A DNA stretch of 63,803 bases, counting the filler, from Octopus bimaculoides (Eukaryota): the NCBI RefSeq assembly GCF_001194135.2. It is 7 parts of 7 records of this genome, joined end to end, with 100 filler letters (N's around TTAATTAATTAA, not from the genome) between each part and the next. Parts side by side here need not be neighbours in the genome. Positions count along the whole stretch, not along the records: positions 39,851 to 44,975 come from NC_069005.1; 6 more parts are not named here. One strand, written 5' to 3'. Position 1 is the stretch's first letter; every line of letters begins with the position of its first letter. The notes beneath the pieces are model-generated. The model was not told the origin of the DNA and made no database searches. It worked only from the letters and a program-made list of their open reading frames with translations. Made by a program: the position numbers and the translations under genes. Shown one piece after another: positions 39,851-45,087 of the stretch.

Positions 39851-40145
39851 GTTTATTGAGCGAAAATACCTAAAAAGCTCCATGAGGCTCCGGCAGGGGA
39901 TGGTGGCGAACCCTGCTGTACTCTTTCACCACACCTTTCTCACACTCTTACTTCCTGTTTCTGTTGTGCCTGTAATTCAAAGGGTCAGCCTTGTCACGCT
40001 GAATATCCCCGAGAACTACGTTAAGGGTGCACGTGTCTGTGGAGTGCTCAGCCACTTGCACGTTAATGTCACGAGCAGGCTGTTCCGTTGATCGGATCAA
40101 CTGGAACCCTCGACATCGTAAGCGACGGAGTGCCAATAACAACAA
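39851..40145 (+). mobile_element. SINE family E (body and 3' end)
   Basis: Aligns to 36490-36730 and 60613-60742. Confidence 0.85.
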
Positions 40146-41292
40146 TTTCTCTTATTGCTACTCGGGTTAAATTTGGTTTCTTTCCACTATAAACTGAAAT
40201 TGATGTTTGTTTCTCTTAGCTAAAGACTATGGTAGTCTTCCTCTCCATTTTTTACGGTTGTTCCTTATTACAATATCTTTTGTAACTCGTTGTTAAAAAT
40301 TATGGTTTCTTTCCGTTTCTTTTGATAGAATTTTCTTCTTTTGTCATGACATAAGAAAAACTGCCGTCCTACATACTGATGACCAGTATTACTGCCCCCT
40401 TTTCCGTTGAGTAAGGCTGACTTCTGGACATTTTACTGATATTTCTGTTTGTGCACCACTTTTGTCATCTTTGAAATTTCGTTGGTTGATGGAAACTGAT
40501 TGATATTCCGTCATTATATTCGTATTTTTTTTTGTTTTCTGCCTCGGAAATCTTTTGAGTATTTTTTCTTAAATTTAATCCTATTATATTGTATATTGTA
40601 AGAAGACGACGGGAGAGGAGAAAATGTACGAGGAGAAAGGAGAATAATAATTGTAAAGTACAACAATAACAGCAACAACAACAACGATGATGATGACGAC
40701 GGTGATGACAATCATAACAATAACAACAGCAGCAACAACAACAATAGCAAAAGCAATAATAACAGAGTGAGTGAATAGCAGAAAAAGATTTCAAGCGTAA
40801 AAACATATATAGACAAGTTGTTGGAAGAATAAAAAACTCTATTTTAATAACAACTGTTATAATTTGGCAATAGAAGTGAACAATTTTGGGGGCAATTCTC
40901 CAATTTTATCAACTAATTTATATACATTATCTCACAATGTCATATTTTAGCAGCATTGTTGTGTCCTAAAAACGTTTCGGTATCTTTATTCTGTCTGCAA
41001 AGCTTCAGAAACTATATTAAATAACCGGATATTGCAAATATTAAATATAAGTTTTAATGTGTTAACAGGAGAAATAAATTATTGCAACATTTGTAATTGT
41101 TGATCAAAACAACAAGAACAGGCAAGATTGTTCATAAGTTCTATTTTAATATTTCAGAGTGGCAAAGTGAAGTTCCGGTAAAGTAAGGCCATGATCTTGT
41201 GTCAGTTTCCAGGGGAGTAAGGGACGGTACAGTGTCGATTTCTGTTTGAAGTTATCGTGGAAAGATATGAGAGTTAGATATCTATTCTCGTA

Positions 41293-41470
41293 AAGGTTTC
41301 AAATTTTGTCACAAGGCCAGCGATTTCGGGAGAGGGAATGAGTCGATTATATCGACCCCAGTGTTCTACTGGTACTTTATTTTATCGACTCGGAAAGGGT
41401 GAAAGGCAAAGTCGACCCCGGCGGAATTTGAACTCAGAACGTAAGGTTGGACGAAATGCCGCTAAAACTT
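41293..41470 (-). mobile_element. SINE family A
   Basis: GAAAGGCAAAGTCGAC...GGAATTTGAACTCAGAACG, the reverse complement of the family body. Confidence 0.8.
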
Positions 41471-41557
41471 TTCCTCATCGCCTTATACATTTGCCTCATA
41501 TTAATAAATGAATACTCGGTCGTGAGTCAACATATGAAATCAATCTGAAATGAAATA

Positions 41558-41776
41558 ACGGTTTCAAATTTTTCCACAGGGGCAGCAACTTTGGGGGAGG
41601 GAATGATGAGTCGATTACATCAACCCAAGTGTTCAACTGGCATTTATTTTATCGACCCCGAAAAGATGAAAGGCAAAGTCGACCTTGGCGAAATTTGAAT
41701 TCAGAACGTAGCGGCTGACGAAATACCACTAAGCATTTCGCCCGGCGTGCTAACGTTTCTGCCAGCGCGCCGCCTT
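41558..41776 (-). mobile_element. SINE family A
   Basis: Near full-length reverse copy ending TAACGTTTCTGCCAGCGCGCCGCC. Confidence 0.85.
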
Positions 41777-42115
41777 GATTTAAAATGAAATAATAGCCTT
41801 CTGCAAGTATGAATACGTCGCTGGGGCAACAGAATTATCTTTACGTTGTGTGTCAAGTCGACCAAGTCACCTTGGTTGAGTTCATCTTTCAGGGATTCCG
41901 ACAATACCGAGGCATTGCAAGAATGAAAAGAAAAGGTACAGCACTCATTCAGAATCCATGTACAATAATCTAGATTCAGTCTGGTGCTCGTTTTACTTTC
42001 TCTCCATTTAACCTTGCGTTTAACCTCACACATATTTTATAATAAACTAACTCATTAAACTCCTTAAACAAATTAACTGATTCCCCAATTGTAAAATTCG
42101 AAAATTCTCAGAGAA

Positions 42116-42410
42116 TTGACAGAATGTTTCCAAGTTCCAATTTCAAAACAATTGGAATCAAACAGAATTTGTGTTAGGGTCACGTGCCATACGTCCCTTA
42201 CACAATTCAGGCTCACAACGCAAATTCATTGCAACAATTTCTTTTCCTCAACAGGCCCTGCTCTATTTAATATTATCACAAGACAAATAAAAAAGAACGA
42301 AAAAGATCCCATCACTTTCAAACAAAACCTGAACAAATTTCTTCAAAGGATACCAGATAAACCATCTGTACCTGGATACACCTGTCAACAACAGCTCCCT
42401 ACTTGAATGG
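42116..42410 (+). mobile_element. CR1-like LINE ORF2 C-terminus
   Basis: NFFSSTGPALFNII...FKQNLNKFLQRIPDKPSVPGY. Confidence 0.7.
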
Positions 42411-42648
42411 ACCATGATACCGTACCTCAAACTTGACTTTAAAATGACTTAACAGATCCTATCAGGTGGTGCTATTATGTTAGTCATGGCCTGGGCCAAT
42501 CTTTGGACGAAACACCTAAGTCATCTAAGTTATGTACACTGCTTGAGGATGTCACAATATTGCAGACAAAGGATGTTATCATAGGATAAAAACGATCTCA
42601 ATCACAATTAGGAAATTATCACCAGGCTGAGAAAAAAAATAATGCATG

Positions 42649-43043
42649 AGGCGTAGGCATGGTTATTAATAGGCTCACTTTGCAACCCTGTGGTTGCTTC
42701 AGCTCCAATGCACGGCACCTTGTGCAAATGTCATTTACTATAGCTCCGGGTTGACGAATGCCTTGTGAGCGAATTTGGCACAGGGAAACTGTGTGGAAGC
42801 CAATGGTATATATGAATGTATATGGATGTGTGTCTTTGCATTTGTGTTTATCTTCACCGTCACTTGACAAACTGTGTTGGCTTGTTTACGTTCTTGTATT
42901 TTAGCGGTTCTGCGAAAGAAACTGACAGAATAAGTACCAGACACAAGAGTTAAGCACTAGGCTCGATTTGCTCGACTAAGCCCTTCAAAACGTTGTCCCA
43001 GTAAGGCCACATTCCAACGAAGGAAATAAGTAAAAGATAAAAG
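42649..43043 (+). mobile_element. SINE family B, full-length and diverged
   Basis: Head, GCCTTGTGAG body, internal TA/TG tract and 3' tail collinear with 44466-44877. Confidence 0.7.
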
Positions 43044-43184
43044 AAAGTTAGAGCACATCTGCAAGACCAGATTTAGACAAAGGCTAAACAAGCTACAGCA
43101 AAATATTGCATATTCTCCGATTCTTTGACTGGTTCCAGTCACTAAACTACGGTCATGCTAGAGCACTGCCTTGCTATGTATACA

Positions 43185-43310
43185 TATGTCGGTCTTTTGC
43201 ATTAGTCGGCTCAGAACTATAGTATAAGACACCCGAGGTGCCGTGCACTGGGACTGAATCTGAAGGACATACTCGAGAAGCGAAATTCTTCATCAGATAG
43301 CCGTGCTAGC
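43185..43310 (-). mobile_element. SINE family B fragment
   Basis: CTATAGTATAAGACAC...GGTGCCGTGCACTGGGACTGAA. Confidence 0.6.
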
Positions 43311-43420
43311 ACATGGTCGAAGTGTATTCAGAAATATTAAATTCGATAAAAAGCAAAAATCTCGTAAAAAATGCGAATTTATGAACTGAATTCACAAATG
43401 CTGATTGTTAGTGGACTTAC

Positions 43421-43980
43421 CTCAAATAGCAGGATAGATAATATAGTTATACTGGTCAGATGAAATACATGAGTCACCTCAAAAAGTACATTGTGTTCCT
43501 CTTCGAGGGTGTCTACTTCTTCCGACCCTCCACTTTGTCTAGAGAAATGATTCGATGAATATTTTTTCGATTTATCTTTGATGATCGATTGATTACTCGA
43601 AGGAGAAAATCTCCGGAGCATAATTTGAGAAGTTTTGATAAGTTTTAGAATATTCTCATGGTCTTTTAAAGATTTCGAAAGCTGTTTCCACATGTCCAAG
43701 AGCAGTTCTTGTTTCTCTTTCAAAACAGTGGCATTGATGTTGTGATGAGGTATACCCATAATTAAAGTAGGAGAATGTGTCGCATCACTACCGTTAGAAT
43801 CTGGAGTCTTCTGCGAGTAGTGAGAACTATTCCTTACATCGTTTATTTCCAGTGTATTTTTCAGATGTCCCAAAACCTGGTCCAAAGTTAAATTGTCTGT
43901 AGCATTAAAGAAATGTGGGAACATCGTTTGTAGAACTTCGGCAAGGTCGTGTTTTTCTGTTTCAGTTCTGTCTAGTTTCT
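43421..43980 (-). CDS. internal exon of a voltage-gated proton channel-like protein (Hv1/TMEM266 family): long S1-S2 loop plus S2 helix
   Basis: Acceptor TATATTTTCAG and donor GAG|GTAAGT bound 560 nt with no stop (phase 1 in, phase 0 out); ends EVTHVFHLTSITILSILLFE, resembling Hv1 S2 (VFHYMSITIL....E, recalled from memory); six N-X-S/T sequons upstream. Confidence 0.7.
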
Positions 43981-44465
43981 CTGAAAATATAGACCAATGA
44001 AAGGAATTCTTGTTAAAACTCTATTCTTATGCAAAACTATAAAATATTTGTATAATGTTGGTTATAAGAAGCTATTTGTTGGATAGCTAAAACAAGTGAA
44101 ATATTACAAATAAATATATTGAATGAAATAAGAGCTGGTTACTCCTATTAAAGTTATATTGCATAATTCATTTTCAATTCATGTGTATACGCCATTAAAA
44201 CTACGTTGTACACACATTCTCAGGTCGTGCTTAATCATGTTACAAAATCTCTTTATCAAGGTAACCCAACATATTTTATCTTTTAAGTTATATTTTGTTT
44301 CAGAATGCTAGCCGACATTAACAGTTAAGCCATCTTCTATTGTCAGACTTATAAACAAAACTGGATATTGTACAAAGCATATATCATATAGAATGTATAT
44401 AATAAAGTGTATATAATTGTTTAAATATAACACATAGTGTTACTGTAGCCATCACAATCCTATAT

Positions 44466-44877
44466 TTTATCTTTTCTTTTATCTGTTTCAGTCATTAGGC
44501 TGCGGCCATACTGGGGCACCGTCTTGAAGTATTTTTGGTAGAATGAATCGATCCTAGTACTTATATGTTTTTCTTTAAGCCTAGTACTTGTTATATCGGT
44601 TTATTTTTGCCGAACCGCTGAGCTTCGGGGATGTAAACAAACCAATACCAGTTGTCAAGCGGTGTGGGTGAGGACAAACGCAGATACGAAGACACACACA
44701 CACACACACCACACACACACACACATTTATATAAACGACAGGCTTCCTTCGATTTCCGTCTACCAAATTCACTCACAAGGCTTTGGTCGGCCCTAGGCTA
44801 TAGTAGAAGACACTTGCCCAAGGTGCCACGCAGTGGGACTGAACCCGGAACCATGCAGTTGACACAGCCACGCCTGT
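44466..44877 (-). mobile_element. SINE family B, full-length with internal (CA)n
   Basis: All segments present; the best-conserved copy in the window. Confidence 0.85.
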
Positions 44878-45087
44878 GATTAAATAATAAATGTACGATG
44901 GAAATTACTGATACTTAATACTTGTTTTAATTTGGGCACAATGCCAGCATGTTTGAGTGACGGAGCTTGACGATANNNNNNNNNNNNNNNNNNNNNNNNN
45001 NNNNNNNNNNNNNNNNNNNTTAATTAATTAANNNNNNNNNNNNNNNNNNNNNNNNNNNNNNNNNNNNNNNNNNNNGTAATGTTTAAG

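What the first reader, a model, noticed from the sequence alone, without database searches (positions are those of the whole stretch)
43421..43980. Hv-like proton-channel exon with a >160-residue, six-sequon extracellular loop
Seen: canonical splice sites bound 186 codons. The last ~22 residues resemble Hv S2, and the preceding ~160 are hydrophilic with NAT, NLT, NSS, NGS, NAT and NQS sequons and several histidines. Established: mammalian Hv1 has a very short S1-S2 loop, while molluscs have expanded Hv paralogues, some with longer loops. Inference: a cephalopod Hv or TMEM266-like paralogue with a large glycosylated ectodomain that could confer extracellular pH, Zn or ligand modulation. I could not locate S1, S3 or S4 exons; they may lie in gaps or outside the window.
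Basis: partly seen in the sequence, partly recalled or inferred. Interest (0 to 1): 0.7.

Follow-up and report, generated by a model that had tools for sequence, protein, structure and literature searches.

The report
Octopus HV3-type proton-channel loop exon
This is a real exon of an Octopus bimaculoides gene for an "unconventional" (HV3-type) voltage-gated proton channel; it encodes the family's giant sugar-coated outer loop plus the start of the second membrane helix, so it is a new, untested member of a family described in 2022-2023, not a new kind of channel.

Summary
Window 43421-43980 (minus strand) is a 560-nt exon with consensus splice sites, 2 nt plus 186 open codons, six N-x-S/T sequons and 12 histidines. 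Its only hydrophobic stretch is the last ~20 residues, which align to S2 of human Hv1.

The piece is 100% identical to O. bimaculoides chromosome CM046625.1. The exon is 100% identical to the annotated but uncharacterised gene LOC106881396. The S1, S2b, S3-S4 and C-terminal exons exist in that genome, 3-50 kb outside the 5.1-kb piece.

The full protein carries the S1 selectivity Asp, an S4 reading LPWRVIR, and Leu at the Hv1 F150 position. The only solved structures it matches by sequence are Hv1 (E 1e-11). It sits inside the clade of Aplysia AcHv3.

Chaves et al. (2022, 2023) already defined this HV3 family by a very large S1-S2 loop and xPWRxxR, and mentioned octopus homologues.

New here:
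- Sequons are enriched specifically in the loops across the family.
- The S1 and S2 helices are predicted to extend outward.
- Cephalopods have their own extra helix.
- Cephalopods lack a furin-like site that about half of the relatives carry.

Function is inferred, not shown.

The parts
43421..43980 (-). Coding exon (560 nt: 2 nt completing a Glu codon, then 186 codons). It encodes the whole S1-S2 extracellular linker and the outer two-thirds of S2 of O. bimaculoides LOC106881396.
   Evidence: Open frame. 100% identical to P0153 residues 174-359 and P0154 residues 56-241. The piece is 100% identical to CM046625.1.
43981..44000 (-). 3' splice site: polypyrimidine tract and AG (tcattggtctatattttcag|).
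   Evidence: The same position and phase occur in O. sinensis L001 and in the distant cephalopod L002.
43415..43420 (-). 5' splice site, gtaagt, directly after the codon for the Glu equivalent to hHv1 E153.
   Evidence: Identical TTTGAG|gtaagt in L001 and L002.
43922..43978 (-). Exon residues 1-19 (KLDRTETEKHDLAEVLQTM), predicted as an outward continuation of the S1 helix.
   Evidence: AF2 model of the O. vulgaris orthologue has one helix over residues 124-173, pLDDT 81-88. The same helix appears at lower confidence in the second model.
43886..43921 (-). Exon residues 20-31 (FPHFFNATDNLT): a turn with a family-invariant Pro followed by the conserved sequon N25 (and N29).
   Evidence: P194 is invariant in A1. 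N25 is present in 7/7 cephalopod sequences. Sequons also follow this Pro in the non-cephalopod rows of A1, and a Pro-to-sequon pattern occurs in 52/106 family loops.
43826..43885 (-). Exon residues 32-51 (LDQVLGHLKNTLEINDVRNS): second ectodomain helix. Sequon N50 starts at its end.
   Evidence: Helix 186-205, pLDDT ~82; helix 58-77 in the second model. N50 is conserved 7/7.
43733..43825 (-). Exon residues 52-82: a Ser/Thr/Asn/His-rich linker of variable length carrying sequons N62 and N82.
   Evidence: pLDDT below 55 in both models. Length varies among cephalopods.
43613..43732 (-). Exon residues 83-122 (ATVLKEKQELLLDMWKQLSKSLKDHENILKLIKTSQIMLR): an amphipathic helix found only in cephalopods.
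   Evidence: Predicted helix 237-276, pLDDT 53-69; also helical in the second model. The WKQLxKSLKxxENILKLI block is conserved in cephalopods and does not align in other molluscs.
43514..43612 (-). Exon residues 123-155: a basic and Ser-rich linker with sequon N129. About half of the non-cephalopod relatives carry R-x-K/R-R|Ala at this position; here it reads FSRQSGGS.
   Evidence: pLDDT is below 50.
43421..43513 (-). Exon residues 156-186: an acidic N-cap and outward extension of S2, then S2 to the Glu equivalent of hHv1 E153. Landmarks are H162/H170/H173 (H-x7-H-x2-H; H173 = hHv1 H140), L183 (= hHv1 F150) and E186 (= E153).
   Evidence: phmmer alignment to 5oqk. Column statistics. His pattern in 84/106 relatives. 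Helix from residue 310, pLDDT 70-94.

Best explanation
The feature is exon 'loop + S2a' of the Octopus bimaculoides gene LOC106881396. [quoted passage not shown]

Shown:
- The exon is spliced between an S1 exon and an S2b exon.
- The protein is a pore-less four-helix voltage-sensor protein.
- It keeps the Hv proton-selectivity Asp in S1 and the conserved acidic residues of S2 and S3.
- Its S4 reads LPWRVIR, so the first gating arginine is missing and a Pro precedes the Trp.
- It has Leu in place of the hydrophobic-gasket Phe (hHv1 F150).
- It has a ~168-residue S1-S2 linker.

Inferred:
- Like the one tested family member, Aplysia AcHv3, it conducts protons through the voltage-sensor itself, with weak voltage dependence and a standing proton leak. 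It probably works as a dimer held by the long helix that follows S4.
- The exon-encoded linker faces the outside (or organelle lumen) and is N-glycosylated, at least at N25 and N50.
- The linker is part structure, part spacer. S1 and S2 continue outward as helices. A Pro-glycan turn and a second helix sit on S1. Two disordered Ser/Asn/His-rich stretches flank a cephalopod-only amphipathic helix.
- Its likely job is to set or modulate gating from outside (external pH or metal sensing through the His cluster at the S2 mouth, or partner binding). It does not form the permeation path.
For: Identity and gene structure:
- Exon identity to LOC106881396 is 100%, and the whole piece is 100% identical to CM046625.1.
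- In that locus the S1 exon lies 4 kb upstream, S2b 16 kb downstream, and S3-S4 and C-terminal exons further on. The same exon order holds in O. sinensis.
- An intron-less 1,937-nt RNA-derived contig from another cephalopod encodes S1-loop-S2-S4 in one frame.

Hv family membership:
- Human Hv1 5oqk scores E 2.6e-10 and mouse 3wkv 7.8e-6. With a family profile they are the only PDB sequences at E <= 0.01 (1e-11 and 3.4e-8).
- The D112, D123, H140, E153, K157, E171, D174, D185, W207, R208, R211 and N214 equivalents are all present.

HV3 class:
- S4 reads LPWRVIR.
- In an NJ tree the smallest clade holding octopus and the 980-aa protein taken here as AcHv3 has 121 xPWRxxR and 0 RxWRxxR members.
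- Loops are a median 124 aa in the PW class against 8 aa in the canonical class.
- Leu or Met stands at the F150 position in 121/121 PW-class proteins, against Phe in 47/47 canonical ones.

Published definition and physiology: PMC10377628 and PMC10911540.

Extracellular and glycosylated:
- The exon has 6 sequons against 2.2 expected, and N25 and N50 are conserved 7/7.
- Family loops hold 314 sequons against 141 expected, while cytoplasmic tails hold 214 against 219.

Loop anatomy: two AF2 models agree on secondary structure.

Loops can tune Hv gating: swapping the S1-S2 loop shifts G-V by about -30 mV in fungal Hv (PMC7910559).
Against: - No functional data exist for this gene or for its orthologous group. 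It is only 39% identical to AcHv3 over S2-S4, so the leak and weak-voltage phenotype is an extrapolation.
- AcHv3's own loop was described as lacking organisation.
- Confidence in the ectodomain is moderate: pLDDT is 81-88 in one model but 58-79 in the other, and the cephalopod-only helix scores 51-69.
- Foldseek found no significant structural match for either model.
- Pfam Ion_trans is below its gathering score.
- S1, S3 and S4 are not in the window. They are taken from the same genome and from gene models.
- Glycosylation, membrane location and dimerisation are not shown.
Confidence: 0.85

Rival explanations
1. It is an HV3-derived protein that no longer works as a plasma-membrane proton channel. 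It could be an organellar channel whose 'ectodomain' is luminal, or a voltage or pH sensor and scaffold without conduction.
For: - R1 is missing and F150 is Leu.
- The review notes that some mollusc Hv-derived sequences have probably lost channel function.
- AcHv3's C-terminus has intracellular retention motifs, and plasma-membrane currents may owe to overexpression.
- The octopus protein is only 39% identical to AcHv3 in S2-S4.
- A conserved C-terminal T-K/R-L motif suggests scaffold binding.
Against: - The selectivity Asp, R2, R3, W207 and all counter-charges are invariant or nearly so across the clade. That pattern argues for selection on the Hv permeation and gating machinery.
- AcHv3 carries the same three substitutions and still conducts protons selectively.
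Confidence: 0.1
2. It is a canonical Hv1/Hv2-type channel that merely has a long, His-rich S1-S2 loop, like Aplysia AcHv2 (79-residue loop, RxWRxxR).
For: The loop is His-rich with 10 His. AcHv2 shows that a long loop can coexist with normal gating.
Against: - S4 is LPWRVIR, not RxWRxxR.
- Exon residue L183 stands where all 47 canonical relatives have Phe.
- The tree places it in the PW clade.
Confidence: 0.03
3. It is a TMEM266/HVRP1-like, non-conducting voltage-sensor protein.
For: It is a stand-alone VSD with a long C-terminal tail, and R1 is absent.
Against: - The only solved-structure sequence matches are Hv1.
- The S1 Asp and the S4 Trp-Arg-x-x-Arg core are present.
- Source databases name orthologues 'voltage-gated hydrogen channel 1'.
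- No TMEM266 reference sequence was available here, so there was no direct comparison.
Confidence: 0.02
4. It is a chance open frame or a gene-model artefact in an intron-rich, repeat-rich region.
For: The surrounding piece is full of interspersed repeats. The O. bimaculoides gene model has a dubious C-terminal insertion.
Against: - About 0.02 such frames are expected by chance.
- The frame and both splice sites are conserved down to 42% identity.
- The exon is present in a spliced RNA contig of another cephalopod.
Confidence: 0.005

Closest known systems
Aplysia californica AcHv3 (HV3 'unconventional' proton channel; Chaves et al. 2022, PMC10911540)
   Same: - S4 lacks R1 and has Pro before Trp (LPWRxxR).
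- Very large S1-S2 loop with many His and no Cys.
- S1 selectivity Asp.
- Leu at the F150 position.
- Helical or coiled-coil start of the C-terminus.
- Same clade in the tree.
   Different: - Only 39% identical in S2-S4. The octopus gene belongs to another HV3 subgroup whose Aplysia counterpart is LOC101862058, at 73%.
- Its loop is 168 aa against 292-299 aa.
- Its N-terminus is ~120-170 aa against 35 aa, and its C-terminus ~190 aa against 535 aa.
- It ends in T-K-L.
- It has no R-x-K/R-R motif in the loop, while AcHv3 has RRKR.
- It is untested functionally.
Human/mouse Hv1 (HVCN1; PDB 5oqk, 3wkv)
   Same: - Four-helix VSD without a pore domain.
- D112, D123, H140, E153, K157, E171, D174, D185, W207, R208, R211 and N214 equivalents are present.
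- A His is also present at the H193 position.
- A helix follows S4.
   Different: - The S1-S2 linker is ~168 residues against ~8 in the canonical class.
- R205 is Leu, L206 is Pro, F150 is Leu and E119 is Gln.
Aplysia AcHv2
   Same: Enlarged, His-rich extracellular S1-S2 loop in a mollusc Hv paralogue.
   Different: AcHv2 keeps RxWRxxR and steep voltage gating, and its loop is 79 aa. The octopus protein is in the PW class.
Fungal Hv channels (AoHv1/SlHv1; PMC7910559)
   Same: They show experimentally that the S1-S2 loop and the outer end of S1 set opening kinetics and the voltage range of an Hv channel. This is the best precedent for a gating role of this exon's product.
   Different: Their loops are short, they are in a different kingdom, and they have a canonical R1.

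Membership tests
Voltage-gated proton channel (Hv/HVCN1) family | Stand-alone S1-S4 voltage-sensor domain with significant sequence similarity to Hv1 and no S5-S6 pore domain | tested here: met
   phmmer against 5oqk gives E 2.6e-10. With a family profile, Hv1 chains are the only PDB matches at E <= 0.01. The AF2 model of the 599-aa orthologue shows S1-S4 followed by one long helix, then mostly low-confidence sequence. The Pfam Ion_trans match covers only profile positions 33-106 and is below the cut-off.
Voltage-gated proton channel (Hv/HVCN1) family | Aspartate in mid-S1 (hHv1 D112), the proton selectivity filter | tested here: met
   VVMDATC aligns to VVLDALL and the column is invariant in A1. 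The S1 exon is present in the same O. bimaculoides chromosome, 3 kb outside the piece. It is not inside the window.
Voltage-gated proton channel (Hv/HVCN1) family | S4 signature RxWRxxR | tested here: not met
   S4 reads LPWRVIR, with R1 replaced by Leu and Pro before Trp. This is the published HV3 variant, and AcHv3 with it is still proton-selective.
Voltage-gated proton channel (Hv/HVCN1) family | S2 landmarks inside the window: external His (H140), gasket Phe (F150), Glu (E153) | tested here: inconclusive
   H173 and E186 of the exon match H140 and E153. The F150 position is Leu (L183), as in 105 of 121 PW-class relatives (13 Met, 2 Ile, 1 Val; none has Phe) and unlike 47/47 canonical ones.
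Voltage-gated proton channel (Hv/HVCN1) family | Proton-selective, voltage- and delta-pH-dependent conductance | not testable with these tools
   Needs patch-clamp. Only AcHv3 of this branch has been recorded.
Lophotrochozoan HV3 ('unconventional') subfamily (PMC10377628) | Modified voltage-sensor motif xPWRxxR | tested here: met
   LPWRVIR in P0153, P0004 and P0001.
Lophotrochozoan HV3 ('unconventional') subfamily (PMC10377628) | [quoted passage not shown] | tested here: met
   About 168 residues, nearly all encoded by the window exon (only the first 2 come from the S1 exon and the split codon). The PW-class median is 124 aa (range 84-576) against 8 aa in the canonical class.
Lophotrochozoan HV3 ('unconventional') subfamily (PMC10377628) | Enlarged intracellular domains | tested here: met
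   About 120 aa lie before S1 and about 190 aa after S4 in P0004. These are smaller than in AcHv3.
Lophotrochozoan HV3 ('unconventional') subfamily (PMC10377628) | Common descent with AcHv3 | tested here: met
   In an NJ tree of S2-S4, the MRCA clade of octopus and the 980-aa protein taken as AcHv3 holds 125 sequences: 121 PW, 4 other, 0 canonical. This was a quick distance tree without support values.
TMEM266/HVRP1 | Closer relationship to TMEM266 than to Hv1 | not tested
All positive evidence points to Hv.

The most novel reading that the evidence does not exclude
The HV3 S1-S2 insert may be a semi-structured, glycosylated helical ectodomain rather than a floppy spacer. Its parts would be outward extensions of S1 and S2, an invariant Pro-glycan turn, and an H-x7-H-x2-H cluster at the S2 mouth. 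Such a domain could sense external pH or metals, or bind a partner, to control a standing proton leak.

In about half of the family this domain carries a conserved furin-type site (R-x-K/R-R|Ala, ~25 residues before S2). Cleavage there would make a two-chain voltage sensor. Cephalopods lost that site and gained their own amphipathic helix. Neither feature is mentioned in the papers I could read.
Probability: 0.2. Interest if true: 0.55.

Novelty: new member of a known kind. Interest (0 to 1): 0.3.

Why it matters
The finding matters modestly. It pins an uncharacterised octopus gene (LOC106881396) to the HV3 branch of proton channels and gives exact coordinates for the loop and the S2 landmarks. 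It also shows that the loop exon cannot be skipped in frame (560 nt, and it carries S2a), so the giant loop is obligatory.

The family-level by-products give concrete, cheap experiments on why lophotrochozoans keep leaky proton channels with giant outer loops. These by-products are the loop-specific sequon enrichment, the F150-to-Leu/Met change coupled to xPWRxxR, the furin-like site missing in cephalopods, and the C-terminal T-x-L motif. This is an open question relevant to acid-base physiology in marine animals. None of it changes the picture published in 2022-2023.

Tried and rejected
- Pfam on the exon alone found no family even at E <= 10.
- Pfam on full proteins gave only a sub-threshold Ion_trans match, except for AcHv3.
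- tblastn of the orthologue against the piece found no S1, S2b, S3 or S4 exon inside 39851-44975, only the loop exon. They were later located outside it.
- Foldseek against the PDB with both AF2 models returned nothing at E < 1. VSD-containing chains appeared only among insignificant hits, so the fold-level test is inconclusive.
- The supplement of PMC10911540, which should list the octopus genes, is not held.
- Literature searches found no later paper on HV3 or on octopus Hv channels.
- A tRNA scan of the piece, looking for SINE heads, found none.
- I considered and dropped three readings: chance ORF, canonical Hv2-like channel, and TMEM266-like protein (see rivals).

Full report
**1. The observation.**
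Read on that strand, 43980 is preceded by tcattggtctatattttcag| and 43421 is followed by |gtaagt. Of the three frames only one is open. After two leading bases (AG, the end of a split Glu codon) there are 186 sense codons, from KLDRTETEK to SILLFE.

The six sequons (NAT, NLT, NSS, NGS, NAT, NQS) sit at exon residues 25, 29, 50, 62, 82 and 129. There are 12 histidines. The only hydrophobic stretch is the last ~20 residues.

Chance is not a credible source:
- With a stop-codon fraction of 0.054 in this piece, about 0.02 open runs of this length are expected over six frames. This is the longest open stretch present.
- Six sequons compare with 2.17 in composition-preserving shuffles (P = 0.008).

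**2. Where it comes from.**
A search with the exon translation found O. sinensis LOC115229029 (96% identical), a second Octopus sequence (88%), and a distant cephalopod ORF (42% identical over 99% of the exon).

The exon is 100% identical to O. bimaculoides LOC106881396 (P0153, P0154 = XP_014787259.1). The whole 5,125-base piece matches O. bimaculoides chromosome CM046625.1 at 100%. So the window is O. bimaculoides, and the gene is annotated but 'uncharacterized'.

**3. The rest of the gene.**
Nothing else in the piece encodes part of the protein. In the O. bimaculoides locus the exons lie as follows:
- S1 exon (…LLHTHAALIMLSFLVVMDATCVIGQLLADIFIV): about 4 kb upstream of the loop exon, 3 kb beyond the piece's edge.
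- S2b exon (TLLKVFAMGRKLLNHKIE): about 16 kb downstream.
- S3-S4 exon, a post-S4 exon and the last exon: further on.

O. sinensis has the same order. The acceptor and donor are in the same place and phase in O. sinensis and in the distant cephalopod.

An intron-less 1.9-kb contig assembled from a sequencing run of another cephalopod carries S1-loop-S2-S3-S4-tail in one ORF, so it is evidently cDNA. This shows the exon is spliced as predicted.

The exon is 560 nt long and carries two-thirds of S2. It therefore cannot be skipped without destroying the frame and the voltage sensor, and the long loop is constitutive.

**4. What the protein is.**
The full-length O. vulgaris orthologue (P0004, 599 aa) and the partial O. 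sinensis protein match human Hv1 (PDB 5oqk) at E 2.6e-10 and the mouse Hv1 chimera 3wkv at 7.8e-6. With a 15-sequence profile these are the only PDB sequences at E <= 0.01 (1e-11 and 3.4e-8).

The alignment puts exon residues VFHLTSITILSILLFE on hHv1 V138-E153. Across the protein, the equivalents of D112, D123, H140, E153, K157, E171, D174, D185, W207, R208, R211 and N214 are present.

Three positions differ in a coupled way:
- R205 (R1) is Leu.
- L206 is Pro.
- F150, the hydrophobic-gasket Phe, is Leu.

I split the 201 relatives by S4 motif, and 180 of them entered the S2-S4 alignment. Of those, 121 have xPWRxxR, and all 121 have Leu, Met, Ile or Val at the F150 position. All 47 with RxWRxxR have Phe there.

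The S1-S2 linker could be measured in 106 proteins of the xPWRxxR class and 26 of the canonical class. Its median length is 124 residues (range 84-576) in the first and 8 in the second. In a distance tree of S2-S4, the smallest clade holding the octopus protein and a 980-aa sequence with AcHv3's published length, loop and S4 motif contains 121 xPWRxxR members and no canonical one.

**5. Comparison with what is known.**
Chaves et al. cloned three Aplysia channels. AcHv3 (980 aa, 299-residue S1-S2 loop, 13 His) lacks R1 and has Pro before the S4 Trp. It is proton-selective, but with ~60 mV per e-fold voltage dependence and a large proton leak, and it is Zn2+-sensitive. The authors mention similar genes in octopus (PMC10911540).

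[quoted passage not shown] It describes huge variation in loop length across molluscs and counts four putative Hv genes in O. bimaculoides (PMC10377628).

The window exon therefore belongs to a known family. Within it, the octopus gene is not the AcHv3 orthologue, at 39% identity in S2-S4. It groups with a widely conserved set that includes Aplysia LOC101862058 (73%), Lottia, Patella, oysters and mussels. I found no functional study of that subgroup or of any cephalopod Hv.

**6. The loop itself.**
Seven cephalopod sequences each carry 5-7 sequons. N25 and N50 are conserved in 7/7, N129 in 6/7 and N82 in 5/7. N25 follows a Pro that is invariant across molluscs.

Across 106 xPWRxxR proteins the loops hold 314 sequons against 141 expected from shuffling. 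Their cytoplasmic tails hold 214 against 219 expected. This is good indirect evidence that the loop is luminal or extracellular and glycosylated.

Two AlphaFold2 runs (599-aa orthologue; 315-aa partial orthologue) agree on secondary structure:
- S1 continues outward for about 20 residues.
- A turn follows, then a 20-residue helix.
- A disordered Ser/Thr/Asn/His stretch comes next.
- A 40-residue amphipathic helix follows. It is conserved only in cephalopods (WKQLxKSLKxxENILKLI).
- A second disordered stretch follows.
- S2 then begins about 12 residues outside the membrane, with an acidic cap (EEEH).

Confidence for the membrane-proximal helices is 81-88 in one run and 58-79 in the other, so the secondary structure is plausible but the packing is unknown.

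At the S2 mouth, H162, H170 and H173 form an H-x7-H-x2-H pattern that is present in 84/106 relatives. H173 is the equivalent of the Zn2+-binding H140 of hHv1. That role rests on established knowledge; the review and note a His at the start of S2 as the Zn site.

**7. Mechanism, with the steps marked.**
Shown by sequence: Hv-type voltage sensor, HV3-type S4, obligatory large loop, conserved sequons.

Inferred from AcHv3:
- Proton permeation through the VSD.
- Weak voltage dependence and leak, plausibly tied to the R1-to-Leu, Pro and F150-to-Leu triad. The AcHv3 authors themselves suspect a breach of the hydrophobic gasket.

Inferred from other Hv channels: the loop modulates gating rather than permeation. 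In fungal Hv, swapping the S1-S2 loop shifts activation by about -30 mV, and the outer end of S1 lies at the dimer interface in animal Hv.

The proposed pH, Zn or ligand role of the octopus ectodomain is reasonable but untested.

**8. Things that did not work.**
- Pfam gives nothing for the exon and only sub-threshold Ion_trans for the protein.
- Foldseek with both models gave no significant hit.
- The relevant supplement is not held.

**9. Verdict.**
The exon is real and correctly read by the first stage. It is a new, uncharacterised member of the published HV3 proton-channel family.

The family-level by-products are worth a specialist's look but do not make this locus surprising. They are loop-specific sequon enrichment, a furin-like motif in half the family but not in cephalopods, the T-K/R-L C-terminus, and xPWRxxR in an annelid and two nemerteans.

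- Interest: 0.3
- Novelty: new member of a known kind

Noticed in passing
Relatives only (P0005-P0014, P0158-P0161 and others). The corresponding window position is 43514-43612, which lacks the motif.: An R-x-K/R-R motif sits a median 25 residues before the H140-equivalent His in 54/106 xPWRxxR-class loops. A narrower window (the last 45 loop residues) gave 52/106 against about 2 expected by chance. The P1' residue is Ala in 36 of the 54. This looks like a proprotein-convertase site that would cut the voltage sensor between S1 and S2. All cephalopod orthologues lack it (FSRQSGGS / SSRKSG). It is not mentioned in the papers read.
   Followed up: partly
window 43430-43432 (exon residue L183): The hydrophobic-gasket Phe of Hv1 (F150) is Leu here. 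It is Leu, Met, Ile or Val in 121/121 xPWRxxR-class relatives, against Phe in 47/47 canonical ones. This third substitution is coupled to R1-to-Leu and Leu-to-Pro. It may bear on the proton leak reported for AcHv3.
   Followed up: partly
C-terminus of P0153/P0004 (outside the window): The protein ends in H-T-K-L. An [ST]-x-[LVIF] end (mostly TKL or TRL) is found in 64/106 xPWRxxR-class proteins and 0/26 canonical ones. This looks like a class I PDZ-ligand motif and hints at scaffolding.
   Followed up: partly
P0019 (Owenia fusiformis), P0018 (Tubulanus polymorphus), P0022 (Lineus longissimus): An annelid and two nemerteans carry LLPWRVIR with loops of 175-265 residues. The 2023 review states that the S4 proline is missing in Annelida and Nemertea, so the proline may be older than proposed.
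   Followed up: partly
L008 (O. bimaculoides locus), gene models P0153/P0154: Both O. bimaculoides models replace the conserved segment QTKSLQGVCRKFGVPEYQITACMPA with an unrelated ~90-residue insert. tblastn finds no exon for that segment in the locus, which contains 33,775 N. This is probably an assembly gap and a gene-model error.
   Followed up: partly
window 41291-41465 and 41556-41732: Two neighbouring copies (82-83% identical) of a ~180-nt interspersed element lie in the downstream intron. Copies also occur elsewhere in the O. sinensis locus. No tRNA-like head was detected.
   Followed up: partly
window 39851-40134 and 44475-44861; (AC)17 at 44692-44725; 40640-40760: More multi-copy interspersed repeats (77-93% identical to several places in the O. 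sinensis and O. bimaculoides loci), an AC microsatellite inside one of them, and an AAC/GAT-rich low-complexity tract. This is ordinary octopus intron content.
   Followed up: no
L004-L007 (P0002): Four ~1-kb contigs from runs SRR11869384-91 carry the exon of another Octopus species (88% identical). The ORF runs through the donor site into the intron, so they are genomic or unspliced reads, not evidence of an alternative isoform.
   Followed up: no
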